Shown here: one piece after another, positions 11,239 through 47,200 of the stretch | Layout of the letters: every line of letters begins with the position of its first letter | Position numbering within the stretch: position 1 is the first letter of the stretch | Origin: Macrostomum lignano | Lineage: Eukaryota | Direction of reading: 5' to 3' | Assembly (NCBI GenBank): GCA_002269645.1 | Contig: NIVC01003104.1 | Location: forward strand, 116,103-180,102 | DNA: 64,000 nucleotides | Program-made: the position numbers and the translations under genes | Notes under the pieces: generated by a model | What the model was told of the DNA's origin: nothing | The model's input: only the letters and a program-made list of their open reading frames with translations | The model's database searches: none

Positions 11239-11973
11239 GAAATAATCGGCCTTCCTTCTGCTTTATTTGTTCGTGATTATAAATAATCCCACGAATCCCA
11301 ATTAAAGTCTGGTACAGAATTAAATTTCGAAGCCAGCTCGGTCACTAAAGAGTGGAGCCAATCAGCATAGCCGTCCAGGTTTGTCCTAAGTATAACAGTC
11401 TGAGCTTCTGAGCTTTAATATTTCAGAGGCCGGGGTGCTGGCAGAGGGTGGGGTAAAGTGGCATCGGGCGTTAATTTTTTATCTCGTCTCCATTGGAAGC
11501 CGCCCCGGTGCAAAGGCTCTGCTGGAGCTGTTGGAGAGCGTCTACCATGCCGTCATTCCCCCTTGCAGCTTCTCTTCCCCATCCCCAACCGTACTCCCCA
11601 ATCCACCTCGGCGCTTCCCTCTTCCCTTTTCCTGCCTCGCCCGTGATCAGCTGAGGAAGGCGCACAGGGTCTGGGAAAAGCCACTCGGTGTGGATTGGGT
11701 CTCCGGCTGAAGTGGCCGTGGAGACGAACTGAAATAGAAGCGATAGAGCCGGGAGAAAGCGAGTCGGCTCGTTTAGCGGATCGGCAATTTCAGCCCTCCA
11801 ATTTATTTTCGAGTCTCCTTCGCTCTTGAAATTTATCTGCCCGAGGGCCCAGCGAGTCTCGAATCGAATCAACCTCGGAGATCCCCAGCCGCCCCTGGAG
11901 TTTTTATTCATCCATTGGGAAATTGTAAAACATCTCGTACGGCTGTTAGACTGCAGCGCCACCTGTTGCGGCC

Positions 11974-12353
11974 ATGCTCAACTACCTGAAGCGCCGATTC
12001 TCGTCGGGCGATCTGCAAGGCGAAGGAGCTGACAGCCGGGCACAGCAGGAACAGGAGCTCCAGCAGCAGCAGCAGCAGGAGCAGCAAAAAGAGCAAAAAG
12101 AGCAACAGGAGCAAAAGAAAGCGGAAGCTCGGGAATCGCAGGCAGCCACGCCGGTGCAGCCAAGAAAGTCGGTCTACCCAAGCGCGCCAACGTCGCCATC
12201 GAAGACTGCGCAGCCGGCGCCAACTTCGGCCAGCAGCTTCGCTGGGCAGATCGGCAGCAGCATCATCGGCCGCAGCCTGCTGTTCCACGGCCGGTCGGCC
12301 AGCCGGGACCGCTGCAAGGTTCTGCTGGTTGTTGACGAGCCGCACACGGATTG
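11974..12353 (+). CDS. Syn: Synapsin coding exon 1 (domains A, B, start of C)
   Basis: GCCATG start; donor TG|GTGAGC. Confidence 0.95.
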
Positions 12354-14221: not shown

Positions 14222-14252
<31 letters not shown>

Positions 14253-17200
14253 TGCGTTTCTTGGCGCTACTCCAAGGTTCAGGAACATTTGGTTTTTTTC
14301 CTGACCCTATCGTCTGTGCCTTCTCTGACTTTCCATTGCAAGCATTCATCTGAGTGGGCCGGGGAATTCAAAATTGGATGTTTTGATACCGTTACCGAGG
14401 ACTAATAATATTTCAGCTTCATGCTGGACTCTCATTTAATACTCATTTTTATGAGTATGAGTATCACAGTCATTGCTCACACAACTTATTACTATTGTTC
14501 ATACAAAGTATGAATAGAATTTCTCATATCTAATCGAAGATTGACGGATTTCAGACATGATTTTACACCAGAGTCGCACAGATAATTAACATTTAGGTTT
14601 CATAAGTACTTAAATATTAATAAAAATTGATTACCTGCCCTAATGGGCAGATGTGCAACCGACAGCTCAGCCGCAGCTATTGCGCGGCGCATCTGAAGGC
14701 TGCGTACGGCTGTTCAGTCCAAGGACTGGGGGGTCGCCACGCACCCCCTCAATTACCCCAGCTAATGCTGGCACCCATTTTACAGCTGGGTGAACTGAAG
14801 CAATGCAGAGTTAAGTGTCTTGCTCAAGGACACAAATCGTTCCGTGGGATCAGGAATCGAACCCCCGACCTTCAAGTCTGAGTCGGACGCTCTAACCACT
14901 AGGCTACAACCCTCAGCCGTAAAACAGTATCTAGGACCATTCGTTAACTGGTTCCTTGACATTAGTTACTAGTGCTAATTACTCCTACTTTTCTGAAGGC
15001 TCATAGTTATGAGATAATTCTATTGATTTTTTGTTGATACTCGTCCTGCAAGCTTGGCTTCCAATGGTCGAACAGTTCCCAAAGCCATCTGCTGGGGGCC
15101 GGGGCAGAGAGCTTGTCCTGTCAGAAACGCAGTGGCCCATCGCCAAGCCCAAGAGCAAATATTTGCCGCCTATTCAAATCGGGAGAACACAGCGACTGCA
15201 CTCTTAGCTGTTGCAGTGGACTGGCATTGTCAGGGATGAGATTTGGAGTGCCGCGATTCCTCAACTGGGTAGCGAGGGGGAGCTCTGGCTTGGACTGCGT
15301 CCAACGGCTTCCTGCATCATAGGTTTAAGGCCTTACAGATTGATGTCAAACTAAGGTTGCGTGTCTAACAGGTTTGATACCTAGCAGTTTTGATCTCTAA
15401 CATGTTTCATGTCTAACCGGTTTCATGTCTAGCCGATTTCGTGTCTAACAGGTTTCATGTCTAACAGGTTTGATGTCTAACCGGTTTCGTGTCTAACAGG
15501 TTTGATACCTAGCAGTTTTGATCTCTAACAGGTTTGATGTCTAGCCGGTTTCATGTCGAACAGTTTTCATGTCTAACAGGTTTGGTGTCTAACAAATTTG
15601 ATGTCTAACAGGTCTCTAGCTCACCGCAGATACTTGCGCTCCACCCGAACCCACCAGGCTCTTCAAGCCGGACTGCGCACTGATTCGTCAGCGAGTTCGC
15701 GACGCTCGCAGCGATTGGCGCGGCCTGCTGGCCGGTTTGACCTACGCCGGGGTGCCGTGCGTCAACCAGGCCGCCACGCTGTACAACTTCGCCGACAGGG
15801 CCTGGCTGGTGAGCGAGGGGCCTCTCACAGAAGAGAATGTGAAGTAAAGATCTTACAGTGTACAGTACATCTAGAACTTCAAACTTGCATGTCCACGGGC
15901 ACGGCAGACTCAAGGTGAAGAACCAGATACTGCTCCTGACCTATCGTCTCTGTCTGTCCTCTCTGCCTGTCCTCTCTGCCTGTCCTCTCTGCCTGTCCTC
16001 TCTGCCTGTCCTCTCTGTCTGTCCTCTCTGCCTGTCCTCTCTGCCTGTCCTCTCTGCCTGTCCTCTCTGTCTGTCCTCTCTGCCTGTCCTCTCTGCCTGT
16101 CCTCTCTGCCTGTCCTCTCTGCCTGTCCTCTCTGCCTGTCCTCTCTGCCTGTCCTCTCTGCCTGTCCTCTCTGCCTGTCCTCTCTGCCTGTCCTCTCTGC
16201 CTGTCCTCTCTGCCTGTCCTCTCTGCCTGTCCTCTCTGCCTGTCCTCTCTGCCTGTCCTCTCTGCCTGTCCTCTCTGTTTGTCCTCTCTCCCTGTCTTCA
16301 CTCCCTGTCCTCTCTCCCTGTCCTCTCTCCCTGTCCTCTCTCCCTGTCCTCTCTCCCTGTCCTCTCTCCCTGTCCTCTCTCCCTGTCCTCTCTCCCTGTC
16401 CTCTCTCCCTGTCCTCTCTCCCTGTCCTCTCTCCCTGTCCTCTCTCCCTGTCCTCTCTCCCTGTCCTCTCTCCCTGTCCTCTCTCCCTGTCCTCTCTCCC
16501 TGTCCTCTCTCCCTATCTCTGTCTCTCTCTACCTGTGTCTCTGGCTGTTTTCCCCTTTCCCTAAATCTACCTCACTCATTATACTCTAAATTTTCCACGA
16601 TGCTACTGTCAGTAGCCAGGATTGTGTATACTCTTTAGCCATGTTCGTGTTATAGGGAGGTGTGCAGTCTAAATTACTTTCTTGAGTACCCGGAGACAAG
16701 TAAACCCCGCTCGCATCAGAATATCCACTTAGCCAGTTGCTACACTGGAAATCCATCGCCCCCCCTTCGCTCCAACAGTTCGCCAACCTGACGCGACTGC
16801 AGGCTCGAACAGGCGCCGAGGCCTTCCCGCTGATTGACCAGACCATCTATCTGGGACACCTGGACCTGGTAAGGCTTGCCGGCTGTTGTTGACAGGATTT
16901 GGCACTATTAGTCTCTTTAGCGGTCCGCGAAATTCAAGCAAAATTTCAGATTCTCACTAGCGATGTATGCTAGGCGGATTTTCAAACAAATAATTCTGTA
17001 AACTGTAACTTTGATAAGGCTAAGCTCAATAGGGCAGTCCCTATCTAGCTAATGCATTTCGCAACGAAGGCACTGCTGTGCAGCTCCTGGCTGCTAACAG
17101 AACCGAAGAAAGATCTGCCGTTTCGCTTTCCGAGCAGCAGAACAAGCAGCCAATGAAGACAATTTTGCCGGAATGATGGGGCCGCTTCGCCTCTCGCTGA

Positions 17201-20200
17201 AAGCCTGTCGTTTCTTGCGCCGAGATAATTATTTTCTGTGCTTCTTTTCCAGCATCCGCGCTCCGTCATTGGGGGGAGGCGGGGGGGCTGGCTGTGGTTA
17301 ATTAGACCCGTGTCCGCGCGCGCTGTGCGTCCCTAGCAACGGGTGGGCACGAGTAAAGTGCAGAGCCTCACCGCTTCACCGTCCCGGGACCGCATTGTGT
17401 CCCAATGAATGATGCCTTCGCAGATTGGCATCGCGTGCAAGCGCCCGCTGGAGCTCACAGCTGAGTCCCAATTGAGCAGAGCTGGTTGGGGGGGGGGCAG
17501 ATTGCTTCTAGTAGCAAAAAATAGTCTGTTCGGAAGCACATCTGTTTCCGTCTCTCCGTCTCTTCTAGCCCGCATGTGTTCCATTCTGAACTTTCTTAAT
17601 CTGGCCGCCCATATAGCCGTACGGAAATCCTGTGCTGTCTAGACTGATCCACTTCTGCCTACACAACTCCAGTGCTCAGTATTGATTTCGCATCGGCTGG
17701 GGATGCACTTTGCCACCCCAGGACTGGGCTCTGATTTTAATGCGATTCTTCACTGCAGAGTGCCGAACTTCAGCGAGCCCTGGGTTGGGCACCGTGCGAG
17801 AGAGAGTTCCAGAGAGTGGCGCGTGTTTTGGGCGGCATTAATCAATATTTTTGGGGATATGCGGAGAGATGGAAACAACTAGGCAGAGTTTATAAAGATC
17901 ATAGAGAGATCATATAGAGATCTTAGAGAGATGGAGACAGATCATAGATGGATCATAGATGGATCATAGAGAGATCATAGATGGATCATAGAGAGATCAT
18001 AGAGAGATCATAGATGGATCATAGAGAGATCATAGAGAGATCATAGAGAGATCATAAAGAGAGATCATAGATGGATCATAGAGAGATCATAGATGGATCA
18101 TAGAGAGATCATAGAGAGATCATAGATGGATCATAGAGAGATCATAGAGAGATCATAGAGAGATCATAAAGAGAGATCATAGAGAGATCATAGAGAGATC
18201 ATAGAGAGATCATAGAGAGATCATAGAGAGATCATAGAGAGATCATAGAGAGATCATAGATAGATCATAGAGAAATCATAGAGAGATCATAGAGAGATCA
18301 TAGAGAGATCATCTATAGAGAGATCATAGAGAGATCATAGAGAGATCATAGAGAGATCATAGAGAGATCATAGAGAGATCATAGAGAGATCATAGAGAGA
18401 TCATAGATAGATCATAGAGAAATCATAGAGAGATCATAGAGAGATCATAGAGAGATCATAGAGAGATCATAGAGAGATCATAGAGAGATCATAGAGAGAT
18501 CATAGATAGATCATAGAGAGATGGAGACAGATCATAGATGGATCATAGATGGATCATAGAGAGATCATAGAGAGATCATAGAGAGATCATAGAGAGATCA
18601 TAGAGAGATCATAGAGAGATCATAGAGAGATCATAGATAGATCATAGAGAAATCATAGAGAGATCATAGAGAGATTAAAGAGAGATCATAGAGAGATCAT
18701 AGAGAGATCATCTATAGAGAGATCATAGAGAGATCATAGAGAGATCATAGAGAGATCAAAGAGAGATCATTGAGAAATCATGCGATTAGGTAGAAATTAA
18801 GGACAGATTAAAGGGAGTGACGAGAGAGATTTGGAGAGAGAAGGCAGAAATTGGGGACAGAGGACAGAGATTAGATAGAGATTAGATAGAGATTAGACAA
18901 AGATTAGACAGAGATTAGCCAGAGATTAGATAGAGATTAGACAAAGATTAGACAGAGATTAGATAGAGATTAGATAGAGATTAGACAGAGATTAGATAGA
19001 GATTAGACAGAGATTGGCCAGAGATTAGACAGAGATTAGACAGAGATGAGACAGAGAATAGACAGAGATTAGACAGAGATTAGACAGAGATTTGACAATG
19101 ACCAGGGAGAGATCATAGATCAAGTTAGCCATTGCAGTTGTTGCCGCAGTTAAACCGGGGAATTTTTAAATCGGTAATTTTTCTATCCTGATTGGTCTGC
19201 CGATCAAGGGAGACGAGGGAGGGGGTCGAGCTGCCCAGACGCGAATTGGTTGGCCGCCTCAGGCTTGAATAGATAGCCAACTCCCTTATGTTTACTGCTG
19301 GCGAGCAAATGCCACTTCTGCCGATGACTTCTAGACTGTTGGGTGCGGAGCTCCGCCCCCTATCTGCTTGCCGCCTCTCCTCCCTTCCCTCATCATATTT
19401 CTTTCCCCAGCAGATGGGGAGAAACTGTGCGCTACAGTGGCGGCACGCCCCCCCCCCAAATCGATTTGGCGCAATTCCCACTCCCCCTCCCCCTGCTGGC
19501 TTGGGAGAAAACCGGCGGATGTTCTTTGAAGGGGCGAATGGGGATCGAATTAGGGAAGCCAGGCCTGCAGTATCCGACTCTCGAGCCATAACTTACATAG
19601 TAGAAGTGCCGAGTGAAGGTGTTCATTTTATTTACTGTGAATTCAATAAGTCACTCTCGATGAAAACAGATCAATACAGCGTGCTCGTTAGATAGCGTCT
19701 TTGGAACTCGTCAGTTTTTGCTCACTTGGTTATGATCGGACTCGTTTTTGCTCTGATTTGAGTCACTCTGCTCTGATTTGAGTCACTCTGCTCTGACTTG
19801 AGTCACTCTGCTCTGACTTGAGTCACTCTGCTCTGACTTGAGTCACTCTGCTCTGACTTGAGTCACTCTGCTCTGACTTGAGTCACTCTGCTCCCATTTG
19901 AGTCACTCTGCTCTCATTTGAGTCACTCTGCACTCATTTGAGACACTTTTGCATTCATTTGAGTCACTCTGCTCCCATTTGAGACACTTTTGCACTCATT
20001 TGAGTCACTCTGCTCCCATTTGAGTCACTCTGCTCCCATTTGAGTCACTCTGCTCTGATTTAAGTCACTCTACACTCATTTGAGTCACTCTGCTCCCATT
20101 TGAGTCACTCTGCACTCATTTGAGACACTTTTGCATTCATTTGAGTCACTCTGCTCCCATTTGAGACACTTTTGCACTCATTTGAGTCACTCTGCTCCCA

Positions 20201-23200
20201 TTTGAGTCACTCTGCTCTGATTTAAGTCACTCTACACTCATTTGAGCCACTCTGCAATCATTTGAGCCACTCTGCAATCATCGGAGTCACTCTGCAATCA
20301 TTAGAGTCACTCTGCAATCATCGGAGTCACTCTGCAATCATTTGAGCCACTCTGCAATCATTGGAGTCACTCTGCAATCATTGGAGTCACTCTGCAATCA
20401 TTGGAGTCACTCTGCAATCATCGGAGTCACTCTGCATTCATTTAGGCCACTCATTTGACTCACAATGTCAGTTTCAATGAAAAAATATGACGGCCATTGA
20501 TTTCCAAATTTATTTAATCAATAAAAGACAAGTTTGAATGCGCAAGATCCCTCATTTTCGAGGCCAACCAATCAGTTCGAAAATTATCATCTTCTGGTGT
20601 AATTTTAGCTCCTATGAATCACGAGGCGACTTGCGAGATCTGCGTGAACATCAATAGAGGTCTGAGACCGGGGCCTCCGAGACTCCGTCTGCACAGTTTA
20701 TCTGTAGATTCCCTCTTCAATAAAAGTAGAATGAATACAGCAAAATAAAGCACACAGAGGCAGAGACTGACATACAAAAATAATGCAAAAAACATCAATC
20801 CGTACGGAGTAAGCGAGGTAAAACTGCTTGCAGAGAGAGAGCTAGTGTGAGGAAACGGCAAATACATCCATAATAATAATAGTAATAATAAATAAATAAA
20901 TAATAACAGTTATAATAATGATAGTAATAGTGTTTATAATAATAGTAATAATTACTAGTGTTATAACAATTATTACTATTATACTTACAATATTACTAAA
21001 GATTACTATAGATTATAATACGCTCGTATTACTCTTATATATAGTAATAATATTATTACAATTAATAACAATATTAACAATAATAAGACAAAACAGCGTG
21101 GCAATGGTTTCGCGGCCAGCCTTAGCGGTACTCATTGAAAAGCGGCAATTGATGGAAAAACTTGAAGGGGACACCACACGGCTCGACAACTACTGGAAGA
21201 GATGAGCGAGCAAGAAATCCACGTTGCAAATGGGGAACTGCGCTAATATTTTTGGTTTCTGATTTGCTTTCACTGCTAATCTTAGCGGAGCCGCAAACCG
21301 GCATAAATGCACTTTAGAACTGACTGAGCCTGATTCAAATCAGCGCGCTGTTTTGTTAAAAACAGTTCAATCCGTGCAGTGATTTCTAAATAAGACGACT
21401 AACTCTTGAGAACTTCAGACTCAAGCTTAACTACGATATTATTATTAAAGAAGTAATTTCATTTTGTCTACTGCGTATGGTGCTTCTGTAGGAGGAAAAC
21501 ACCAACGTAAGAGCTACACACTGCCACATAAACACTGACCCGAATAGAGACAGAGAGAGGAGACAGAGAGAGAGAAAGACTGAGAGTTGAGTCGGCCTAT
21601 CACTCTTATCTTATATTCTTCTCTCATCCTATCCTATTCTGTTCACTGTCATTCTTACATTACCTTTCATGAAATAAACGAAATCTATCAAAGCATTTCT
21701 GGGCTGCTGCCAATAATGGATTTGCCTGTCGGAACAACTAAGAAATTTTCTTTTGCTATTGTTCGAGCTCGAAGGGTGCAGTGGGCGGTTGGATCAACAG
21801 AATAATATTAATCATTCAGAGGAAAATAACACCGATTTGTCGATAAAGTGTAACGTCCGGTTATTAATATTATTTGATTATGTTAGCGTGTAATGCCTCT
21901 GCGCTGGGCTTCAATTTGAAGATTGCCTGTGGCGCATTTCTTGTAGCGCTTGGTGCTGGCAGTGTGCCAGGCGCAGCCTGCGGTCCGCCTGTAGGGGTCC
22001 CTGTAGTAGGCGCAGTAGGAGAAGCTGGTCAGGCACATGAAGTAGTCCCTGCTGGGGTCGAAGCTGCACGAATTCGCCTGTTCTGCCGTGACGTTTTTGA
22101 TTGGTTGAAACAGTCTGTCCTCGATCTGATTGGGTTGCGAAGGAGGGGAGGTGCTGAGGGTATTGAGAGGCCGATCTGCCTAATGTATTTTGTTTATCTG
22201 CCCGATGCATTCATACATGTATATCTGTGGAATGTGTTTGTCGATCTGTGGAATGTGTTTGTCGATCTGTCGAATGTGTTTGTCGATCTGTGGAATGTGT
22301 TTGTCGATCTGTCGAATGTGTTTGCTAGTGTGTTGAATGTGTTTGTCAATGTATCGAATGTGTTTGTCAATGTGTTTAATGTGTTTTTCGATCTGTCGAA
22401 TGTGTTTGTCAATGTGTTTAATGTGTTTGTCAATGTGTTTAATGTGTTTGTCAATGTGTTTAATGTGTTTGTCAATGTATCTAATGTATTTAATGTGTTT
22501 GTCAATGTATCTAATGTGTTTAATGTGTTTGTCAATGTATCTAATGTGTTTAATGTGTTTGTCAATGTATCTAATGTGTTCGTCGATGTATCTAATGTGT
22601 TTAATGTGTTTGTCAATGTATCTAATGTGTTTAATGTGTTTGTCAATGTATCTAATGTGTTTGTCGATGTATCTAATGTGTTTAATGTGTTTGTCGATGT
22701 ATCGAATGCGTTTGTCAATGTGTTGAATGTGTTCATCGATCTGCCACATTTCTTTGTAGATCTTCCTAATGTATGTATAATCTACCTAATAGGCTCGTCT
22801 ATCTGTCTGATGTCCTCGATTTTCTTAATGTATCTGGTGATCCAATGCAAATGCTGGCAATGTTTCCGTCTACATGATGATCTTATAGCGAATAATACTT
22901 CGACAAAAAATTGAATTTGTTCATCCGCCTGCTCTGTATTTAATTATCCAACTAATCCTTAATGGCATTATATTTGTATAAGTCTAGGGCGGATTATCCT
23001 AAACCGCCCTTCGGCCCACTCCGATAAACGCACTTGTTCATTTTGGCAGCGGTCAGAAAAAAGGTTCCAAGCAGCGGAAATCGCACAGCCCCGTCCAGCC
23101 TCAATCTGTGTCGGCTGTATGAAGCGGAGGCTGGGCGCATTTTTCGCGCGCCTAAAAAACACACAAGTCTGAGATCCCGGCCTAGAGATAAGAAGTCCAG

Positions 23201-32200: not shown

Positions 32201-35200
32201 TCCCATCACTCAAATCTCACTCCCATCACTCAAATCTCACTCCTATCGCTCAAATCTCTCTCCCATCACTCAAATTTCACTCCTATTGCTCAAATCTCAC
32301 TCCCATCACTCAAATCTCACTCCCATCACTCAAATCTCACTCCAATTGCTCAATTCTCACTCCTATCGCTCAAATCTCACTCCCATCACTCAAACCTCAC
32401 TCCCATCACTCAAATCTCACTCCCATCACTCAAATCTCACTCCCATCACTCAAATCTCACTCCCATCACTCAAATTTCACTCCTATCGCTCAAATATCAC
32501 TCCCATCACTCAAATTTCACTCCTATTGCTCAAATATCACTCCCATCACTCAAATCTCACTCCTATCGCTCAAACCTCACTCCCATACTCAAATCTCACT
32601 CCTATCGCTCAAACCTCACTCCTATCGCTCAAATATCACTCCCATCACTCAAATTTCACTCCTATCGCTCAAACCTCACTCCCATACTCAAATCTCACTC
32701 CTATCGCTCAAACCTCACTCCTATCGCTTAAATATCACTTCCTTCACTCAAATCTCACTCCCATTACTCAAATCTCACTCCAATTGCTCAATTCTCACTC
32801 CTATCGTTCAAATATCACTTCCTTCACTCAAATTTCACTCCCATTACTCAAATCTCACTCCAATTGCTCAAATCTCACTCCCATTACTCAAATCTCACTC
32901 CAATTGCTCAAATCTCACTCCTCTCACTGTTTTCTTATATCTCATATATTCCTAGATCTGTTCCCCTATATATTTGCCCTGCATCTGGCCTATCCCTCGC
33001 TATCCCTGTTCCAGACAAAAGTGCGTTGAATACTTGTAACTTTGCACTTCTACAGCTCCTTCAAATGCTAGACTGCATGCAAAGCCGGTATTGAGGGTTG
33101 AGAGATTTGGGCGCCCGTAGCAGCGGCCCCCCGTCAAGCGTCATTCGCTGACAGCCGACAGGCGGCCGCTGATTGAACCGTAGCCCTTTGTCTTCCCCCA
33201 GCTGTTGCCGCGTAGGCGGAATGGACGGCGGTTTCTATTGAAGTGCCATTGAAGTTTTGACAATTCGACATGCGCCTTCGCCCATCAGCTATGGGTCTAT
33301 CAAGCTCTTTCCCTTGAAAGTTGAATACCCTAATCATTTCGGCGTCGGTAATGAAAACAAGGTTGACACTTTCTTAGAAAAGAAAGGAAGCAGACTAATG
33401 AGAAGGGAATTAACTTTTGATAATAAAGTTCTAGTACTGTAGATTTGTGATTCGTGTACTGGTTAATTTTTGGTTCCTGTACTGATTAATGTATGGTTCC
33501 TGTACTGGTTGATTAATGATTCCTGTACTGGTTGATTTTTGCTTCCTATACTGGTTGATTTATGATTCTTGTACTGGTTGATTTATGATTCCTGTACTGG
33601 TTGATTAATGATTCCTGTACTGGTTGATTTATGCTTCCTATACTGGTTGCTTTATGGTTCATGTATACTGGTTGATTTACGGTTCCTGTACTGTAGTTTC
33701 CATCACATTTATGCTTTTGACTTAGGGTTATTGTAAGGCTACTTAACCCCTTCCCTACTCCATATGTAGATAGGCTCGGTACAAATCTCATTGAACGCGC
33801 CTACTCACCCGACACTTTGAGCAGCCTCTAGCGTAGGTTCCGTGCCTGAGGTATCTGGCCTGTTGATCCGTCACCACGGGGGAGCCCAGCTCCGAGTTCA
33901 TTATTGCCTTCCGCATCGTCTTATTGGGCCACTGGGCGATCCAGCTGCACACGGACAGCATCGGCTGGCCGTGCTCCAGTTTGCCTGGCAACGGGGGCGT
34001 CAGTAACAGTCCGAGTTTCATTCTGGGAAATACGCCCCATCTCTCTAAGGTGGTCAGCTGTGAACACTCTCATCTCATTGCCTCACTCTCATCTCATTGC
34101 CTCACTCTCATCTCAGTGCCTCACTCTCATCTCATTCCTCTCACTTTCATCTCATTGCCTCACTCTCATCTCATTGTCTCTCACTCTCATCTCATTGCCT
34201 CGCTCTCATCTCATTGCCTCACTCTCATCTCATTGTCTCTCACTCTCATCTCATTGCCTAACCCATCCGCCCCACCCGCTCACCGGTCACCAGGTACAGT
34301 TTTTTCAAATGCACTTCGCGCGAGATAATGCTGTTGGCTTCGCCGTGGTACCTGACCACGATGCCGTGGCCGCAGTTGTCTCTCTCTCCGTAAATCCACA
34401 GGTGCATCCGACGGTTGGGGATGAGGTTTGGAATCTGCGTTCGGAATCCGTTGGTTTTGCGGGCGGGATTGATGAGTTGACAGTTGATCTGCTACTCCCC
34501 AACAGAGCACTTATTATCCAGCAAAGCACTCACCTTGGCCGAGTTGCGGAATACCGCTTTCACGCTGACCCAGTAGCGCTTGAGGTGCATGGTTGAGCTC
34601 AAATATTCACCGGTCATTCGTAGGAACCGAACTTTCAAAGCTGTCAATGCAGTTATGGGGGTAATGCGACAGTTATTGCAAGGTTATACAATAAGATTAT
34701 CGATGCATGCCCATGCGTACGTCAGAAAATGTACATGTGGACAAGTACAGCTGGGCAAGTCGCTGTCCGATTCTCACCGAAGTCGCTGGCGCAGAAGGCC
34801 ACCTGCGGGTGCAGCGGGTGATGCGGCCGGCAGGGGCAGGGCTTGGTGCCGAACCCATTGGGTATGACGGCTGCCACTGGCGGCGGCCCGCCGGCGGCCA
34901 GGGCCCAGCCGCCCACTAGCAGGAGGCTGGCGAGGCTGAACAACCGGGCGGCGGCTGTCGGCGACGAGTTTGCCGGCGTCTGCGTCGGCGGCAGCGGCGG
35001 CGAGTGCAGGTGGGAGGGCTCAAGTGTCGGGCTGCTGCTGCTTGAACGGGCCATGCCGCAGGGCAAGCAGCATCGCCGATTCAGGACTGGCTGGCGGCTG
35101 GGGGATTCGAGCTGGGACCTTGGGCGCGCTGACGCAGAGAAGGGAGCGCAGGCTTGGAGCGGCAGAATTGCGCCAAAAGTTCAACAATAAACGGCAAAAG

Positions 35201-38200
35201 CAGAAGAGGGGACCAGAGAGCGGTGCTTGGGCGAGTCGTCAAAGTCTGCTTTTTCAATAGCCAAGTGCCGATCATAGCTGGGGGGAGTTGAGGTGGCGTC
35301 TCCCCCTCTTAATCCTTTATCCTATCCGGGCGGGCCGCTCCGTCCCCTCCCTGCCACTTGCTATCCCCGGGAGCCGGGAAGACGGGAAGAAAGAGATTAG
35401 GAAGGAAGGAGAGAGACATGGGCTTAGAGACGCTAGAAGACCGGGAGACTCAGTAAGGCCGGCGATTGGGCCCTGCTGTTCCGGTCGGGGATGGAGGGGC
35501 TCTGCGTGCGGGTACACTGGAGTGCGCGAGAGCTCGACAAGGGGACAGGCGGGGACTCGAGGGTTCAGGCAGGATTGCAATCGCCGCTCATTAATCTGGC
35601 TATGAAGCTCTCTGCCGCTAAATTGCTTTCCTAGCCGTGTTCTGTCTCTCTACTAGTATCTACTCGAGCAGAACCCTCCAGATGAAGCTGAGCCATAAGG
35701 CCTATGTGCCGCAGGGCGTACTTGATGAGCCCCTCCCCCGGTAAGGGTGAAACCTGTCTTAATCCCAACGTTGGTTCAAGTCGTCACGATTCTGCCGAAA
35801 TTTCCTTATAGTGTTTAAAAAATTATCCCCCCGTTCAAACAAAAACCAAGTTGTGAGCCCGAAGTCAGGACTCTGGGGAATCGCTATTGGGACAGTGATG
35901 GCCAGAGGTAGAGCATCTGATCTTCTTCAATTGTCAAGAGATTTAATTTTATTGGCCAATAAATACTGACTTGGCAGCAACCTCCCCTATGTCAGGGATG
36001 CTAAACTGTGTCAGGGTTGCTGTCAGGGATGCTAAACTGTGTCAGGGTTGCTGTCAGGGATGCTAAACTGTGTCAGGGATGCTAAACTGTGTCAGGAATG
36101 CTAAACTGTGTCAGGGATGCTAAACTGTGTCAGGGATGCTGTTAGGGATGCTAAACTGTGTCAGGAATGCTAAACTGTGTCAGGAATGCTAAACTGTGTC
36201 AGGGATGCTAAACTGTGTTAGGGATGCTAAACTGTGTCAGGAATGCTAAACTGTGTCAGGAATGCTAAACTGTGTCAGGAATGCTAAACTGTGTCAGGGA
36301 TGCTAAACTGTGTCAGGGATGCTAAACTGTGTCAGGGATGATAAACTGTGCCAGGGATGCTAAACTGTGTCAGGGATGCTAAACTGTGTCAGGGATGCTA
36401 AACTGTGTCAGGAATGCTAAACTGTGTCAGGGATGCTAAACTGTGTCAGGAATGCTAAACTGTGTCAGGAATGCTAAACTGTGTCAGGAATGCTAAACTG
36501 TGTCAGGGATGCTGTCAGGGATGCTAAACTGTGTCAGGGATGCTAAACTGTGTCAGGGATGCTAAACTGTGTCAGGGATGCTAAACTGTGTCAGGGATGC
36601 TAAACTGTGTCAGGGATGCTAAACTGTGTCAGGGATGCTAAACTGTGTCAGGAATGCTAAACTGTGTCAGGGATGCTAAACTGTGTCAGGGATGCTAAAC
36701 TGTGTCAGGGATGCTAAACTGTGTCAGGAATGCTAAACTGTGTCAGGGTTGCTAAACTGTGTCAGGGTTGCTGTCAGGGATGCTAAACTGTGTCAGGGAT
36801 GCTAAACTGTGTCAGGGATGCTAAACCGTCCCTATCCTCGATCTACTCTCAGCCCAGCCCATATGCCCAGCAGAAGCCGCGGTGCATGAAAAACAAATGC
36901 CGACTTTTCTGGGCCCCGACGTCGGCTGGCGGACTGCTCAGATATGAATAATAAATGCGGGCTGAGCTCAGGGCCGCTCGCGTCAGCTTTAATGCGTGAA
37001 TAATACAACAGTATGCTCGCATGCGCGAATACGCAATGCCAAGAAGACCTAAAAGCGGAACCTGGAGTGGCAGCTCTTCCTGAAAAATAGGATTAGGCAA
37101 GGGCTCAAAGCAGCTCAGTGGTGAACGCAGCTGAATCTCGAGCCGCGACCCCTGGTTCGATTCCGTGCGGCATTCATTTGGGGGGTTTGTGTACGAAAAT
37201 TGGCCGGAAGGTTGTCGTGAGATTCATGGCAATGAGGATCAAACCCCAGGCACAGAGACTGTACATGCCTATCGATTAGAAAGTCATGAGTCGAGTATGT
37301 GCTCAGGAGTCAAGCGGAATGGGCAGAATTGCCTCAGTCGAGTATGTGCTCAGGAGTCAAGCGGAATGGGCAGAATTGCCTCAGTCGAGTATGTGCTCAG
37401 GAGTCAAGCGGAATGTGCAGAATTGCCTCAGTCGAGTATGTGCTCAGGAGTCAAGCGGAATGGGCAGAATTGCCTCAGTCGAGTATGTGCTCAGGAGTCA
37501 AGCGGAATGGGCAGAATTGCCTCAGTCGAGTATGTGCTCAGGAGTCAAGCGGAATGTGCAGAATTGCCTCAGTCGAGTATGTGCTCAGGAGTCAAGCGGA
37601 ATGGGCAGAATTGCCTCAGTCGAGTATGTGCTCAGGAGTCAAGCGGAATGGGCAGAATTGCCTCAGTCGAGTATGTGCTCAGGAGTCAAGCGGAATGTGC
37701 AGAATTGCCTCAGTCGAGTATGTGCTCAGGAGTCAAGCGGAATGGGCAGAATTGCCTCAGTCGAGTATGTGCTCAGGAGTCAAGCGGAATGGGCAGAATT
37801 GCCTCAGTGCTGCTTGTGGGATGATGTCGATGAAAGCGTTGCTTGCGGCTATAAATTTTGTACAGCTCGTGGACTTTTTCTCAGAATTCCAAAGATCTTC
37901 AACTGAGAAGTGGAGACTTTATTGTAATTAAAAAAACAGCTCAATCTTACAAAATTTGGGCTTCGCGGAACAGCCGGCCATGCCAAGTGGTCGCCTTGGC
38001 GCTACTGCTGTCTGAAAACACACTGAGCGAGACAACCCCTTGACAGATGGCGCAGAAAACACAGTCTGGTCTGGGCGGTGCCTTTCAATGATCCCGACTT
38101 CTGTTTCTCAATAAGTCGGTGCGTGGCGGGGAGGGGATTATGAATAATTGCTGAGTATTGAGATTGTGAGAATGGAATTATTGCCTAGTTGGGGGGGGGG

Positions 38201-41200: not shown

Positions 41201-44200
41201 AAACTGTGTCAGGGTTGCTAAACTGTGTCAGGGATGCTAAACTCTGTCAGGAATGCTAAACTGTGTCAGAAATGCTAAACTGTGTCAGGAATGCTAAACT
41301 GTGTCAGGGATGCTAAACTGTGTCAGGAATGCTAAACTGTGTCAGGGTTGCTAAACTGTGTCAGGGATGCTAAACTGTGTCAGGGATGCTAAACTGTGTC
41401 AGGGATGCTAAACTGTGTCAGGGATGCTAAACTGTGTCAGGGATGCTAAACTGTGTCAGGAATGCTAAACTGTGTCAGGGATGCTAAACTGTGTCAGGGA
41501 TGCTAAACTGTGTCAGGGATGCTAAACTGTGTCAGGAATGCTAAACTGTGTCAGGGATGCTAAACTGTGTCAGAAATGCTAAACTGTGTCAGGGTTGCTA
41601 AACTGTGTCAGGGATGCTAAACTCTGTCAGGAATGCTAAACTGTGTCAGAAATGCTAAACTGTGTCAGGAATGCTAAACTGTGTCAGGGATGCTAAACTG
41701 TGTCAGGAATGCTAAACTGTGTCAGGGTTGCTAAACTGTGTCAGGGATGCTAAACTGTGTCAGGGATGCTAAACTGTGTCAGGGATGCTAAACTGTGTCA
41801 GGGATGCTAAACTGTGTCAGGGATGCTAAACTGTGTCAGGAGAGATAAGAACTGTGTTAAGAGAGATAAACTATCTCAGAGGTTGCTAAACTGTATCAGA
41901 CACATGCGCTAGACTGTGTCAGGGACTGCTAAGTATCAGGCTCCAGGCATTGTCAGGGGTCTCAGTACTGTGTCAGCTACGGTAGAAATAAGTTAGATTG
42001 TCTCTAAGATGCCGAAAATCAAAGATTTAACTCAGGCGAGCTTGAAATGCTAAAAATAGAAGCAGCAAGTTGCAGAGCAGCGCGCGAACCCCTTTCTATT
42101 GATATTGCGTCGTCGATTGGGTCTGTCAATAGAAATGGTATCCCAGTCTCAAAATAATCATTTCCAGCTCTTCTATTTCGCCATCCCACGACTGACCGGT
42201 TATTTTCCTCACGCTGAAAAAAATTTTGCTCATAAGTGGAATGGCGATTTCTATTTTGGTTGTGCTTAACGACTAATGCCTTCCTTCTCTCTGTGTCTCT
42301 GGACTCTGTCCCCTGTCCAAGCCCTCCTTCCTGCCTGAAGTTTCATTACGAGTATAAACGGAGGCCGTTTGCACTAACCCTGCCAGCCCGCCCCCTCCCA
42401 CTCCCCCTCAAAATGGATGAAATTTGCCAAAAATATCTCGCTGAAGCTAGGGCGGATCCGCGGCTTCCCCATAGAATAGCCAACTAGGGCAGGGGGTAGC
42501 GTGTTTACACAGCCAGTGCTGGGCTGCGATTTTCAATGGGACAGTGGGCTGAGCCATGGAGGCCCAGCAACCAACTCTTCCCCGAACAGCCCAACAGCTT
42601 TTTAGCTTGCACACAAAACACAAACTACGACTCAGTTGAAGCTTTTCTTTGTAGAATTAAGTCTGATTTTAAAGCTGAATGAATTCTCCGTGATGGAGTA
42701 GAAATCATTGCACAATGAGCAGTAGTCTATGAGCTAGATTCCAGTGTCTGAATCGCGTTACGACCCAGGTCATGCGATTCACAGCCGTGAGAGCCAACCC
42801 CAGTAGTCTATGAGCTAGATTCCAGTGTCTGAATCGGGTTACGACCCCAGGTCATGCGATTCACAGCCGTGAGGGCCAACCCCAGTAGTCTATGAGCTAG
42901 ATTCCAGTGTCTGAATCGCGTTACGACCCCAGGTCATGCGATTCACAGCCGTGAGGGCCAACCCCAGTAGTCTATGAGCTAGATTCCAGTGTCTGAATCG
43001 CGTTACGACCCCAGGTCATGCGATTCACAGCCGTGAGGGCCAACCCCAGTAGTCTATGAGCTAGATTCCAGTGTCTGAATCGGGTTACGACCCCAGGTCA
43101 TGCGATTCACAGCCGTGAGGGCCAACCCCAGTAGTCTATGAGCTAGATTCCAGTGTCTGAATCGGGTTACGACCCCAGGTCATGCGATTCACAGCCGTGA
43201 GGGCCAACCCCAGTAGTCTATGAGCTAGATTCCAGTGTCTGAATCGCGTTACGACCCCAGGTCATGCGATTCACAGCCGTGAGGGCCAACCCCAGTAGTC
43301 TATGAGCTAGATTCCAGTGTCTGAATCGGGTTACGACCCCAGGTCATGCGATTCACAGCCGTGAGGGCCAACCCCAGTAGTCTATGAGCTAGATTCCAGT
43401 GTCTGAATCGGGTTACGACCCCAGGTCATGCGATTCACAGCCGTGAGGGCCAACCCCAGTAGTCTATGAGCTAGATTCTAGTGTCTGAATCGCGTTACGA
43501 CCCCAGGTCATGCGATTCACAGCCGTGAGGGCCAACCCCAGTAGTCTATGAGCTAGATTCCAGTGTCTGAATCGGGTTACGACCCCAGGTCATGCGATTC
43601 ACAGCCGTGAGGGCCAACCCCAGTAGTCTATGAGCTAGATTCCAGTGTCTGAATCGCGTTACGACCCCAGGTCATGCGATTCACAGCCGTGAGGGCCAAC
43701 CCCAGTAGTCTATGAGCTAGATTCTAGTGTCTGAATCGCGTTACGACCCCAGGTCATGCGATTCACAGCCGTGAGGGCCAACCCCAGTAGTCTATGAGCT
43801 AGATTCCAGTGTCTGAATCGGGTTACGACCCCAGGTCATGCGATTCACAGCCGTGAGGGCCAACCCCAGTAGTCTATGAGCTAGATTCCAGTGTCTGAAT
43901 CGCGTTACGACCCCAGGTCATGCGATTCACAGCCGTGAGGGCCAACCCCAGTAGTCTATGAGCTAGATTCTAGTGTCTGAATCGCGTTACGACCCCAGGT
44001 CATGCGATTCACAGCCGTGAGGGCCAACCCCAGTAGTCTATGAGCTAGATTCTAGTGTCTGAATCGCGTTACGACCCCAGGTCATGCGATTCACAGCCGT
44101 GAGAGCCAACCCCCAAGGCACAGACAGTGTACATGCCTGACGATTAGATAGTCAGGGCTGCTGTACACCCTGTGTGAGCGTGTTCATGAGTCGAGCATGT

Positions 44201-47200
44201 GCTCAGGAAAGAGCGATAAATGCGGAATTGCCACTGCACTGGTTGTCGCGGTCACAATTTTCTATATTTTCCTCTTGGTTTTTCACTTAACTTCTGAGAA
44301 TTTATTCAGCTTCAAAATGAGACCAAGTTCGATAAAAAATAGTTTAAACAAAACCGAAGTTATGATAACTTTAGTAAACACAGAAAGAACACAGAGACTG
44401 GGCCTGCCTTTTGTTTCTAAACAGAAAAGCCGCAGTCAATCTGCGGTGGTCTGAAAATCATGTGATGAGTGGCAAATCCAGGTTCTGGTTCTGGGACTCC
44501 ATGGCTGAGCGCTGGGCCGGCACTTCAGTTAGTTACTAATAAATCTCCCGCGCCCAGTGCCTGCCAACGGGCCTTGGTTACACTCACCCAGTCTCTCCTG
44601 TATCTCCCTCCCCCCTCTATCTATCTTCCCCAAGTCTCGAAAACTTCAACTGAGCCCTCGTCCCTTCTCCTACCCCAACTCCGAACTGCCGCCCCCGCAG
44701 CAGGCGGCGGCGCCGTCTGCTGCATCGGCGGTAGCGGGCGCGGACGGCACCGGCGGCGGATTTCCAATCGCGCTGAAGATTGGCCACGCTCACAATGGAA
44801 TTGGCAAGGTGAGTGGGCTTTTAATTGGGATTCCGCATTTTTATGATTTGTTCTAATTAATTGATCCGGCGGGGAGCAATTTCCTAACTGTTTGGCAATC
44901 AAAACGGTGCTTATTAATTTTGAATTAGCAGATACTCAACAAAATTGATTGAGCAATAAAAATTAACAGCAATATAAAAAAAATTGATTTGCGTATCTGG
45001 CAATTTTAAAGCAAAGAGTACCTAGCTAACTTACAGAGCCAATGTAGCTATTATAACTGAAGCCAAAATCCCTAATTTTTGGGCTTCTATGAGTTACTTT
45101 TTAATTGGCATTGTATTTTCAATTAGATCTTGTCCTGCTCCAGCAGTGGAAGCAAAAGCTATGAGCGTTTCCTCAAAATCCTCGGTGTCGTCTTTGACCT
45201 TCCACGAGAATGCCAAAGCCATCAGCGTCAAAGTCCGCTCCAACACAGCTCATCAGCGACTTCAGCTAATCGCTTCTTCAGCGCTTTCAAAATTCCGCTT
45301 TGCGCGTTGTCACCGGGTGCCACAGCTGCTCTGCCGTCGGGCACCCCTGAATGCAGAATGCACCGTGCTTTCGGAAAGAGCTCACTCTGAGCTATTCGCC
45401 TCCCAATACTGGATCTCCTGCACCCTCCCCAGCTGCACATCGCGTGCTTCTTCTCAACTGGCGGCGCCAAAGAACTAACTACCCTGGCTGGCTGCACCTA
45501 CGCGGCCAAACTCGAATCTTCGACCTCTCCGCTCTGACGCCGTTGCTGTAGCTCTGCCCCCCTTTTCCGACCGATCTGACCCCAGCTGCTCTCTGGGCGC
45601 AGCCTCGTTCGGCCATTGCTTTCATCGACGAGCTGTTTCCAGGTCCCGGTGCCATGACAATCACACACATACATGCACAGGAGTGTTTATGACCATGCAA
45701 TTAGACTAAAGCCTAACTTTAGTTGCAGACTTTTGTCTATAGTCGAAAAAGTTCCCGCAAACTGCGTCAATTGTCCCCCTCATTGAGAGCCTCAAACAAC
45801 TTGTCTATGGTAAAAATCTATTTTGTGAAAAATGAACGGCCATAGACATTTCAGCTGCCATTCTATTGTTTTAGCACTGAGCCCTGAGTTTTCTTGCATT
45901 AAATGCTGCCATTCACAGCCACAAGGGCCAAACCCACAGGGCACTGAGGGTGCGTTGTTTGCGCTCGGGGATCAGAAGAGCTGTGGAATTTGGATTTTGA
46001 ACCACAGGCCTCCTGCTAGCTCTATCAGTCATTTTCAAAACTACTGCTTACGCTAAATTCAAGTTCGAGAATTTTTATTCAGACTGATAACGGTGGGTTC
46101 CAGTTTCTTTTTTCCGACTCGTCAAGAAGCCTTGGCCGCGTGAAAGGCGTTAAGAAAATTTGCTGCTGAAAAAAGAAGAAATTTGTGCCTCACCATCTCG
46201 AATCGCTGATGCTGCTAAACTCCGCTTTAATCCGATTTCCTAGCGCAGCCTCCCGGCGCCGCAAGAGGAAAAATTGCTAATCCAATCAGGCCAATCCGAT
46301 TATCTTCCGCAACCGGCTTTCATTTCCTCAATTTTTCCCGCTCTTCTAGAAGAACCATTGCCAGACAAAACAACCAGCGGCAAACCCCAAAAGCCAATAA
46401 AATGCACGCAAAGATCGCACGAAATTGGATGTGACGCACAGTTTTTTTGTTCGAATTCATGCGCTTTCTTTTCCAATCGGGAACGCTACGCCCACGCTCT
46501 GCCCACGGCTTCTTTCGTCGGCGGGCGGGAGCTCGCAGAAGTTAAGAACCAATTGAAGTAATATTATTTTTGAAACCGTTGACGTTGAAACGCATTGTCA
46601 GAGGAGCGAAAGTCTGGTCCCCAAACATGCGCGCATATCCAGTGGGCGCACTCCCAATAGAAGCGCGCAAATAATTTTTACTTCTACACAGATGTTTCAA
46701 GTGTCCGGATTTTTAATTAGCTCTGGAAAGTTGTCTGCATCTTCTACTAGAAGCAGTTTCTTAACTGGTCTCTTACTCTGCCACCCCTTCCAATCCCTTC
46801 TTCCAAGCTTCGCGCTGCCGACCCGGAAGCGCTGCAAGAGGCGGGCAGCCTGCTGGCCCTGCTGCCCGCCGGAGATGCCTACGCAACAGCCGAAAGTCTG
46901 CTGGAGGCCCGCTGCGACATTCTGTTGCAGAAAATCGGCGCCAACTACAAAGCATTTCTGTGAGCGCGGCAGGGTTGCTGCTTGAGTGATGGACATTCAT
47001 GTCATGAGTGATGGACATTCAGGTCATGAGTGATGGACATTTAGGTCATGAGTGATGGACATTCAGGTCATGAGTGATGGACATTCAGGTCATGAGTGAT
47101 GGACATTTAGGTCATGAGTGATGGACATTCGGATTCTGAGTGATGGAAATTCGGATCATGAGAGATGGATATTCAAGTCATAAGTGATGGACATTAAAGT

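What the first reader, a model, noticed from the sequence alone, without database searches (positions are those of the whole stretch)
16869..44700. TIMP gene nested antisense in the orthologous synapsin intron, apparently in a flatworm-like lineage
Seen: a complete 5-exon TIMP on the minus strand lies wholly within the 27,832-nt intron between synapsin exons ending [15 protein letters not shown] and starting ...[16 protein letters not shown]. Known: Syn-Timp antisense nesting occurs in vertebrates (SYN1/TIMP1, SYN2/TIMP4, SYN3/TIMP3) and Drosophila; the vertebrate host intron, as I recall it, lies between ...PNHKEM and L..PVVVKxGHAHSGMGK, the same position. Inference: the nesting is retained in this probably spiralian genome despite heavy repeat invasion. 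Most TIMP exons are short and split, so automated annotation could miss or fragment the gene.
Basis: partly seen in the sequence, partly recalled or inferred. Interest (0 to 1): 0.8.

Follow-up and report, generated by a model that had tools for sequence, protein, structure and literature searches.

The report
Flatworm TIMP gene nested inside synapsin

Summary
A 10-exon synapsin gene (540 aa, all GT-AG introns) lies on the + strand at 11974-49997. Its intron 5 is exactly 16869-44700 (27,832 nt). Inside it, on the minus strand, is a 5-coding-exon TIMP gene (35054-21883, 317 aa). It passes the Pfam TIMP threshold and is identical to an annotated Macrostomum lignano protein.

I tested the host intron position directly. 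It is the same phase-0 site, 15 residues after FPL, as in Drosophila grimshawi. It matches within 18 nt in the mollusc Haliotis and the annelid Capitella. For mammals the match rests on published work.

The arrangement is not new. Candiani et al. 2010 showed the synapsin-TIMP nest from sea anemone to human, including an annelid. This makes the finding a new member of a known kind.

The TIMP is annotated, while I found no M. lignano synapsin in the public protein sets.

- **Duplicated unit:** M. lignano has a second, anciently diverged synapsin-TIMP pair nested in the same intron, so the whole unit was duplicated, as in vertebrates.
- **Loss in flukes:** Two trematodes have a short, empty host intron.

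Interest is low to moderate.

The parts
11974..12353 (+). Synapsin-A exon 1 (domain [15 protein letters not shown], to ...VVDEPHTDW); ends in phase 2
   Evidence: GTGAGC donor
12943..13000 (+). Synapsin-A exon 2 ([19 protein letters not shown])
13083..13162 (+). Synapsin-A exon 3 ([26 protein letters not shown])
15658..15808 (+). Synapsin-A exon 4 ([12 protein letters not shown]...FADRAWL)
16779..16868 (+). Synapsin-A exon 5 ([30 protein letters not shown]); GTAAGG donor, phase 0
16869..44700 (+). Synapsin-A intron 5, the host intron (27,832 nt); 53% is minisatellite arrays
44701..44808 (+). Synapsin-A exon 6 (QAAAPS...[19 protein letters not shown])
46808..46959 (+). Synapsin-A exon 7
47997..48071 (+). 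Synapsin-A exon 8
48150..48252 (+). Synapsin-A exon 9
49572..49997 (+). Synapsin-A exon 10 (end of the C domain, Pro/Ala-rich linker, E domain ...[19 protein letters not shown], stop)
37951..37981 (-). Optional upstream TIMP-A coding exon ([10 protein letters not shown]+T). Only GenBank model P0121 uses it, spliced to an acceptor at 35128. Its true 5' end is unknown.
34778..35054 (-). TIMP-A coding exon 1: ATG, hydrophobic signal-like segment, [20 protein letters not shown]; ends in phase 1
34534..34640 (-). TIMP-A exon 2 ([13 protein letters not shown]...VFRNSAK)
34284..34434 (-). TIMP-A exon 3 (IPNLIPN...DNCGHG...KKLYLVTG)
33809..33984 (-). TIMP-A exon 4 ([19 protein letters not shown]...GCSKCR)
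21883..22125 (-). TIMP-A exon 5 (C-terminal domain [12 protein letters not shown]...RRGITR plus stop). It follows an 11.7-kb intron.

Best explanation
This is the Macrostomum lignano copy of the ancient synapsin-TIMP nested gene pair. A TIMP gene with its own start and 5 coding exons sits on the opposite strand, wholly inside intron 5 of a complete synapsin gene. That intron is the same one that hosts TIMP in insects, molluscs, annelids and mammals. The arrangement is therefore inherited from the bilaterian (in fact eumetazoan) ancestor and not newly formed.

The two genes are separate transcription units.

- **Synapsin-A** encodes a neuronal synaptic-vesicle phosphoprotein with the A-domain phosphorylation site, the ATP-grasp C domain and the E domain.
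- **TIMP-A** encodes a 12-cysteine protein that looks secreted. Its N-terminal domain is a TIMP/NTR module and would be expected to inhibit metzincin metalloproteinases.

The gene structures, the identities, the nesting, the orientation and the intron position are shown here. Expression of both genes, secretion and protease inhibition are inferred. No functional coupling between host and guest is shown in any species. The most economical reason for retention is that a gene inside an intron cannot easily leave without damaging the host.

M. lignano carries a second, anciently diverged pair (Syn-B/TIMP-B) with the same architecture, so the whole unit was duplicated together.
For: - **Synapsin model:** 10 GT-AG exons, 540 aa, Pfam Synapsin 1.2e-32 and Synapsin_C 3e-55.
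- **TIMP model:** 5 GT-AG exons. It scores Pfam TIMP 1e-10, above the cutoff, and NTR 5e-5. A profile of the M. lignano TIMPs hits PDB TIMP-1, TIMP-2 and TIMP-3 in its 15 best matches, with E down to 5e-6. The protein has 12 cysteines, 10 of which align with human TIMP cysteines.
- **Source:** 100% identity to M. lignano BOX15_Mlig011161g2, and locus L001 is an exact substring of the window.
- **Same nest on other contigs:** A homeologous contig (L002) carries it with 99.4% CDS identity. A divergent paralogous locus (L009) also carries it.
- **Same host intron elsewhere:** It holds an antisense TIMP in D. grimshawi, Haliotis rufescens and Capitella teleta.
- **Shared TIMP intron:** TIMP intron 1 has the same position and phase in Drosophila and M. 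lignano.
- **Literature:** Candiani 2010, PMC2825198.
Against: - **No expression data:** I could not examine RNA evidence, so expression of either gene is not shown.
- **Divergent C-terminal half:** The Pfam TIMP profile matches only positions 3-118 of 183. The C-terminal domain is recognised only by cysteine pattern and by the M. lignano paralogs.
- **Distance to other TIMPs:** A single-sequence HMMER search of 1.84 billion proteins found only M. lignano relatives, so this TIMP is highly divergent.
- **N-terminal extension:** About 19 residues lie between the hydrophobic signal-like segment and Cys1. If they are not removed, canonical inhibition would be blocked, because it needs a free Cys1 amino group.
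- **Synapsin-A status:** It is the faster-evolving paralog, and it is absent from the public protein sets I searched.
- **Vertebrate comparison:** The vertebrate position rests on the literature plus exon numbering. I had no vertebrate SYN/TIMP locus that I could read.
Confidence: 0.9

Rival explanations
1. TIMP entered this synapsin intron independently in the flatworm lineage (convergence or secondary insertion), and was not retained from the ancestor.
For: The M. lignano TIMPs are so divergent that orthology to other nested TIMPs cannot be shown from sequence alone. Candiani 2010 makes the same point for invertebrate TIMPs.
Against: The intron, the phase and the antisense orientation are the same in Drosophila, Haliotis and Capitella. 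TIMP intron 1 is shared with Drosophila. Both M. lignano pairs use the same intron.
Confidence: 0.04
2. One or both genes at this locus are decaying duplicates. M. lignano has recent genome duplication plus an older Syn-B/TIMP-B pair, so the nest here would be a relic and not a working gene pair.
For: Synapsin-A has the longer branch and lower Pfam scores than Syn-B (187 vs 240 bits for the C domain). No synapsin-A protein is in the public sets. The two TIMP-A homeologs differ at 3 synonymous and 3 non-synonymous sites, which is too few to show constraint.
Against: All 15 coding exons are open and have canonical splice sites. The motifs characteristic of the family are intact: [12 protein letters not shown] and the E domain in synapsin; CxC, HPQ and 12 Cys in TIMP. 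TIMP-A and TIMP-B keep every cysteine and every intron position at only 38-39% identity. Synapsin exons 4 and 5 are identical in the homeolog.
Confidence: 0.08
3. The nest is kept because the two genes are functionally coupled, for example through antisense transcriptional interference or shared chromatin, and not merely trapped.
For: The unit was co-duplicated and both copies stayed nested over a long divergence (Syn-A/B 56% and TIMP-A/B 38-39% identity). This mirrors the three vertebrate pairs.
Against: Reviews report no evidence of coordinated expression or function in mammals (PMC7308558). Trematodes and nematodes kept synapsin after the nest was lost (Candiani 2010). Co-duplication is what segmental or whole-genome duplication would produce anyway.
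Confidence: 0.12

Closest known systems
Drosophila Syn/Timp nested locus (Pohar et al. 1999); read here in D. grimshawi, L004
   Same: A single TIMP lies antisense inside a synapsin intron. The intron position and phase are identical, 15 residues after FPL and before the ...K.GH.H exon. The first TIMP coding exon ends at the same place and phase (C-x-[AS]-D-[FY] + G|GTGAG).
   Different: The fly Timp is compact (1.2 kb, 210 aa), and Cys1 follows directly after the signal peptide. The M. lignano gene spans 13-16 kb with an 11.7-kb last intron. Its protein is 317 aa, with about 19 extra residues before Cys1, two internal insertions and a rearranged C-terminal cysteine pattern.
Vertebrate SYN1/TIMP1, SYN2/TIMP4 and SYN3/TIMP3 pairs
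   Same: The TIMP has five coding exons, is antisense, and lies in synapsin intron 5 (Rahkonen 2002 for Timp4/Syn2; Candiani 2010). There are several paralogous nested pairs in one genome, produced by duplication of the whole unit.
   Different: The M. lignano duplication is independent. Syn-A and Syn-B are sisters in 197 of 200 NJ bootstraps, and the two TIMPs are each other's only detectable relatives. I did not test for an un-nested TIMP like TIMP2. I could not read a vertebrate locus directly.
Capitella teleta and Haliotis rufescens Syn/TIMP nests (other spiralians)
   Same: The host intron and orientation are the same. Candiani 2010 had already reported Capitella.
   Different: As annotated, the exon before the host intron runs 18 nt further (…HKEMVSNLWL). 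Their TIMPs are closer to canonical TIMPs. Each has a single pair.
Trematode synapsin loci (Clonorchis sinensis, Schistosoma haematobium)
   Same: They are flatworm synapsin genes with the same exon boundaries around the host intron.
   Different: The homologous intron is only 1.4-1.5 kb, and I detected no TIMP anywhere in either locus. This agrees with the near absence of TIMPs in trematodes (PMC3679795).

Membership tests
TIMP (Pfam PF00965) | The N-terminal inhibitory domain (NTR/OB fold) scores above the curated profile threshold | tested here: met
   PF00965 gives 42.1 bits against a cutoff of 23.1 (E = 1e-10). NTR PF01759 gives 23.4 bits against 21.9. The 15 best PDB profile hits are all TIMP-1, -2 or -3.
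TIMP (Pfam PF00965) | N-terminal Cys-x-Cys followed by the HPQ..FC..D motif | tested here: met
   [20 protein letters not shown] at 34838-34779.
TIMP (Pfam PF00965) | Twelve cysteines forming six conserved disulfides over two domains | tested here: inconclusive
   There are 12 Cys, and 10 align with human TIMP cysteines. The human C132/C137 pair is absent. Two other Cys (..FMC....KKC..) are conserved in all M. lignano paralogs. The disulfide pairing is unknown because the AF2 model failed (pLDDT 34).
TIMP (Pfam PF00965) | The C-terminal domain is homologous to the TIMP C-domain | tested here: not met
   The Pfam and PDB profile matches stop at the end of the N-domain (profile positions 3-118 of 183). 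Only the cysteine spacing around C..C.W resembles TIMPs.
TIMP (Pfam PF00965) | Cys1 is the first residue of the mature secreted protein, since its free alpha-amino group binds the catalytic zinc | not testable with these tools
   No signal-peptide predictor was available. About 19 residues ([18 protein letters not shown]) lie between the hydrophobic segment and Cys1. TIMP-B also has an extension before Cys1, about 30 residues long. The requirement itself comes from established TIMP-MMP structures.
TIMP (Pfam PF00965) | Inhibits matrix metalloproteinases | not testable with these tools
   This needs a biochemical assay.
Synapsin | Synapsin N-terminal and ATP-grasp C domains score above the Pfam thresholds | tested here: met
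   PF02078 gives 112.6 bits and PF02750 gives 187.4 bits.
Synapsin | The A-domain phosphorylation motif at the N-terminus and the E domain at the C-terminus | tested here: met
   [14 protein letters not shown] at the start and [13 protein letters not shown]...DM at the end are read directly from the model. Both are shared with the trematode and annelid synapsins printed.
Conserved synapsin-TIMP nested pair | The TIMP lies wholly within one synapsin intron, on the opposite strand | tested here: met
   TIMP at 37981/35054-21883 (minus strand) lies inside intron 16869-44700 (+ strand).
Conserved synapsin-TIMP nested pair | The host intron is at the conserved C-domain position (…FPLI[DE]Q-x9 | … K-x-GH-x-H) | tested here: met
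   The position and phase are identical in D. grimshawi. The match is within 18 nt in Haliotis and Capitella. The same intron exists in a mammalian SYN1-like gene as intron 5. That the vertebrate TIMPs occupy it comes from the literature only.

The most novel reading that the evidence does not exclude
In Macrostomum the whole synapsin-TIMP nest was duplicated long ago, and both diverged copies have stayed nested in the same intron, independently repeating what happened in vertebrates. The most novel reading still open is that the nest persists because host and guest are functionally coupled (antisense or chromatin interplay) and is not simply a trapped gene. That would make M. lignano, which can be genetically transformed, a tractable system to test a 25-year-old question.
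Probability: 0.12. Interest if true: 0.6.

Novelty: new member of a known kind. Interest (0 to 1): 0.3.

Why it matters
**Phylogenetic reach.** The finding extends one of the best-known conserved nested gene pairs to Platyhelminthes. Within that phylum, the free-living, early-branching Macrostomum keeps the nest, in two old paralogous copies. The trematodes I sampled have lost it and shrunk the intron to about 1.5 kb.

**Synapsin copy number.** Candiani 2010 stated that synapsin is single-copy outside vertebrates. M. lignano is an exception.

**Annotation.** Both M. lignano synapsin genes appear to be missing from public protein sets, while their nested TIMPs are present only as 'hypothetical protein'. 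Anyone using this model for neurobiology or regeneration would want that fixed.

None of this changes the general picture established in 1999-2010.

Tried and rejected
- **tblastn with human TIMPs:** I had to build the other exons by eye and then confirm them against the annotated protein.
- **Candidate exon 5:** It has no Pfam hit on its own.
- **Single-sequence HMMER:** A search of 1.84 billion representatives returned only M. lignano paralogs, so I could not build a deep alignment.
- **AlphaFold2:** The 5-sequence alignment gave pLDDT 34 and pTM 0.23. The model is unusable, so I ran no fold search.
- **Vole 'synapsin-1-like' loci:** L003 and L005 were fetched to read the mammalian nest directly. 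They are odd TIMP-less copies, and L003 has a tandem array of exon-5-like pieces in intron 5. They were useful only for exon numbering.
- **Dicrocoelium synapsin:** The gene range is too long, so no DNA was returned.
- **Ridgeia (annelid):** The 5-kb homologous intron showed no TIMP by tblastn or motif search. The method is insensitive, so I do not treat this as evidence of absence.
- **Homeolog dN/dS:** There are only 6 differences, which is uninformative.
- **Other features:** There are no Rfam families or tRNAs in the window. I found no further convincing ORF in the host intron.
- **Assembly artefact:** I considered and rejected this, because three separate contigs show the same nest.


Full report
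**What is in the window**

[15 protein letters not shown] lies at 16824-16868 and is followed by [22 protein letters not shown] lies at 44761-44808, in an exon that begins at 44701 after a CAG acceptor.

Using a remembered human SYN1 sequence only as a guide for tblastn, and then reading the splice sites directly, I assembled a complete synapsin gene. It has 10 exons at 11974-12353, 12943-13000, 13083-13162, 15658-15808, 16779-16868, 44701-44808, 46808-46959, 47997-48071, 48150-48252 and 49572-49997. Every intron is GT-AG, and the frame stays open for 540 aa.

The model scores 112.6 bits on Pfam Synapsin and 187.4 bits on Synapsin_C. It begins with the A-domain motif [14 protein letters not shown] and ends with the E-domain motif [13 protein letters not shown]. 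Intron 5 is 16869-44700, which is 27,832 nt and phase 0, exactly as reported.

**The nested gene**

On the minus strand inside that intron I found [20 protein letters not shown] and built four exons by eye: 35054-34778, 34640-34534, 34434-34284 and 33984-33809. All have GT-AG sites. Together they pass the Pfam TIMP gathering threshold.

A protein search returned two Macrostomum lignano entries. BOX15_Mlig011161g2 (352 aa) is 100% identical and BOX15_Mlig022355g1 (317 aa) is 99% identical. Both are named 'hypothetical protein' or 'NTR domain-containing protein'.

These entries supplied the fifth exon, which lies at 22125-21883 after an 11.7-kb intron. I had flagged that stretch only as a cysteine-rich ORF. 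The 352-aa model adds a small upstream exon at 37981-37951.

The product is therefore 317 or 352 aa, not 335. The full protein scores 42.1 bits on Pfam TIMP. A profile of the M. lignano TIMPs hits PDB TIMP-1, TIMP-2 and TIMP-3 in its 15 best matches.

The fetched locus L001 is an exact reverse-complement substring of window 11883-47981. The window is therefore from assembly GCA_002269645.1, contig NIVC01003104.1.

**Is it the orthologous intron?**

I tested this directly where DNA was available.

- **Drosophila grimshawi:** Timp (5423-6653, minus strand) lies in the Syn intron between ...DGFPLIEQTFFPNPRDL and FQFTKFPSVLKAGHCHGG. That is the same residue position and phase as M. lignano ...[17 protein letters not shown] | Q...[13 protein letters not shown].
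- **Haliotis rufescens (abalone):** An annotated TIMP (64582-68741, minus strand) lies between ...YYPNHKEM(VSNLWL) and LITPKFPVVVKIGHAHSGLGK.
- **Capitella teleta (annelid):** Uncalled TIMP-like exons (DACSCSLGHLQTHFCQA and others) lie on the minus strand of the same intron. This reproduces the report by Candiani et al.
- **Mammals:** A vole SYN1-like gene shows this intron as intron 5 (...FPLIDQTFYPTHREM | L). Mouse Timp4 is published as lying in intron 5 of Syn2 (reference in PMC2599898). Candiani et al. state that the location is conserved in all species they analysed.

The vertebrate comparison therefore rests on the literature, not on a locus I could read. TIMP gene structure also agrees: the first coding exon ends at C-x-[AS]-D-[FY] plus one base, followed by GTGAG, in both Drosophila and M. 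lignano.

**What is already known**

The nesting was described for Drosophila and human in 1999 (Pohar et al.). Candiani et al. 2010 (PMC2825198) extended it to amphioxus, Ciona, sea urchin, Capitella and Nematostella, with nematodes as the exception.

A 2023 survey already lists two canonical TIMPs in M. lignano but does not mention synapsin (PMC10755359). In the papers I searched I found no report on the nest in flatworms. The finding is a new member of a known kind.

**What turned up beyond the finding**

1. **A homeologous contig carries the same nest.** L002 has 6 differences in the 954-nt TIMP CDS, a host intron of about 20 kb and a 5.3-kb last TIMP intron.

2. **There is a second, anciently diverged pair.**
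   - The only other proteins detectable with the window's TIMP in 1.84 billion representatives are M. lignano paralogs.
   - One of them, BOX15_Mlig025997 (TIMP-B, 38-39% identity), also sits antisense inside a synapsin gene on a third contig (L009).
   - I built that gene, Syn-B. It has the same ten exons with the same intron phases.
   - TIMP-B (10001-14337) lies in the 10,184-nt intron between ...FPLVEQAFYPKYQDL and NMSHDTYPLVMKIGHAHGGLGK.
   - Syn-B scores even better on Pfam than Syn-A.
   - Syn-A and Syn-B share 55.7% identity in the C domain and are sisters in 197 of 200 NJ bootstraps.
   - TIMP-A and TIMP-B share all four intron positions and phases.
   - The nested unit was thus duplicated as a whole, well before the recent genome duplication that produced the 99%-identical homeologs. 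This parallels the vertebrate SYN/TIMP pairs and is an exception to the statement that synapsin is single-copy outside vertebrates.
   - The caveat is that the tree uses few taxa, a distance method, and two sequences that share a compositional bias.

3. **Two trematodes have lost the nest.** In Clonorchis sinensis and Schistosoma haematobium the homologous intron is only 1.4-1.5 kb, and I detected no TIMP in either locus. This agrees with the near absence of TIMPs in trematodes (PMC3679795).

4. **The synapsin hosts appear to be unannotated.** Neither Syn-A nor Syn-B retrieves any M. lignano protein from 5.8 billion clusters; the best hits are 43% and 56% identical. The gene tables of all three M. 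lignano loci list only the TIMP.

**The protein itself**

The TIMP is very divergent. Ten of its 12 cysteines align with human TIMP cysteines. The short C132-C137 loop is absent, and two other cysteines are conserved among the M. lignano paralogs. There are two insertions of about 15 residues in the N-domain. Profiles do not recognise the C-terminal domain.

About 19 residues separate the hydrophobic signal-like segment from Cys1. TIMP-B also has an extension before Cys1, about 30 residues long. Canonical inhibition needs Cys1 as the free N-terminus, as established from TIMP-MMP structures. So either a further processing step removes the extension, or these are not canonical inhibitors. I could not test this. 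The structure prediction failed (pLDDT 34).

**How it most likely works**

The two genes are independent, convergently arranged transcription units. Nothing here or in the literature shows coupling (PMC7308558). Retention is most simply explained by entrapment, since leaving an intron cleanly is rare.

The co-duplicated and co-retained pairs are what segmental or whole-genome duplication would give anyway. Functional coupling remains possible but unsupported. I give it about 0.12.

**The intron**

Minisatellite arrays with periods of 11-82 nt cover 53% of the intron. The same 19-nt unit forms arrays at 35990-36826 and 39763-41899, on either side of the TIMP 5' exon. I saw no other convincing gene, Rfam family or tRNA.

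**Verdict**

The novelty is modest: a new phylum for a known conserved nest, plus an independent duplication of the unit and an annotation gap.

Noticed in passing
L009 (NIVC01000158.1): TIMP-B at 10001-14337 (+); Syn-B exons at 21623-4430 (-): A second, anciently diverged synapsin-TIMP pair in M. lignano is nested in the same intron. Syn-A/B share 56% identity in the C domain and TIMP-A/B 38-39%. Intron positions and phases are identical in both genes, so the whole nested unit was duplicated.
   Followed up: yes
L002 (NIVC01002217.1): TIMP at 10001-16953; synapsin exons 4-6 at 23050-1437: This is a homeologous copy of the window's locus, with 6 differences in the 954-nt TIMP CDS. The host intron is about 20 kb instead of 27.8 kb, and the last TIMP intron is 5.3 kb instead of 11.7 kb. 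The size differences lie in the repeat-rich introns.
   Followed up: partly
window 11974-49997, and L009: Neither M. lignano synapsin gene has a counterpart among 5.8 billion public protein clusters, and the gene tables of the three loci list only the TIMP. The host genes appear to be unannotated.
   Followed up: partly
L009 reverse complement, about 19750-19790 (last Syn-B exon): There is an apparent 1-nt frameshift at a CCCCCGGGGGG run, between the proline-rich linker and the E domain (…[17 protein letters not shown] is in another frame). It may be a homopolymer error in the assembly.
   Followed up: no
window 34838-34895 (minus strand); P0123 residues 60-88: Both TIMP paralogs have an extension between the hydrophobic signal-like segment and Cys1: about 19 residues in TIMP-A (…GFGTKP-CPC) and about 30 in TIMP-B (…SFGRPG-CPC). 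Canonical TIMPs have Cys1 directly after the signal peptide. The n-region before the hydrophobic segment is also unusually long (37 aa).
   Followed up: no
P0124 (UniRef A0A1I8GN27, 143 aa): This looks like a fragment of a third M. lignano TIMP. It is 40-42% identical to the C-terminal half of TIMP-A, and all cysteines are conserved. UniRef names it 'Transposase'. No contig was available to check whether it is nested.
   Followed up: no
L006 26296-27683 (Clonorchis); L010 10128-11604 (Schistosoma haematobium): In both trematodes the intron homologous to the host intron is only 1.4-1.5 kb, and no TIMP is detectable in the synapsin locus. The nest has been lost in these parasites.
   Followed up: yes
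L007 about 53009-53026 (Haliotis); L011 about 8759-8776 (Capitella): The annotated mollusc and annelid synapsins both extend the exon before the host intron by the same six residues, VSNLWL. The first three codons read like a GTGAGC donor. This could be a conserved alternative donor 18 nt downstream.
   Followed up: no
L003 5538-13175 (Alexandromys fortis 'synapsin-1-like'): Intron 5 of this vole gene is filled with about 50 tandem copies of exon-5-like sequence and holds no TIMP. It is either a rodent-specific duplicate or an assembly oddity.
   Followed up: no
window about 2800-6230 (+): This is a glycine cleavage system H protein gene (Pfam GCV_H, 1.3e-41). It is split by an intron of about 1.3 kb made almost entirely of CT-rich minisatellite, so very long spurious ORFs run through it.
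   Followed up: partly
window 62571-63338 (-): An ORF here matches Pfam DUF5524 (71 bits, E = 1.5e-19). It is probably an exon of a neighbouring gene downstream of synapsin.
   Followed up: no
window 35990-36826 and 39763-41899; also 50800-53200: The same 19-nt minisatellite unit (TGTCAGGGATGCTAAACTG) forms two arrays, on either side of the TIMP 5' exon. A 2.4-kb purine-rich array at 50.8-53.2 kb gives a GC skew of up to +0.7.
   Followed up: no
window 24543-24878 and 28840-29172 (-): These are two copies of a dispersed repeat with similar ORFs (…[50 protein letters not shown]). They bracket the 2.7-kb 23-nt minisatellite and may be the ends of a non-autonomous element.
   Followed up: no
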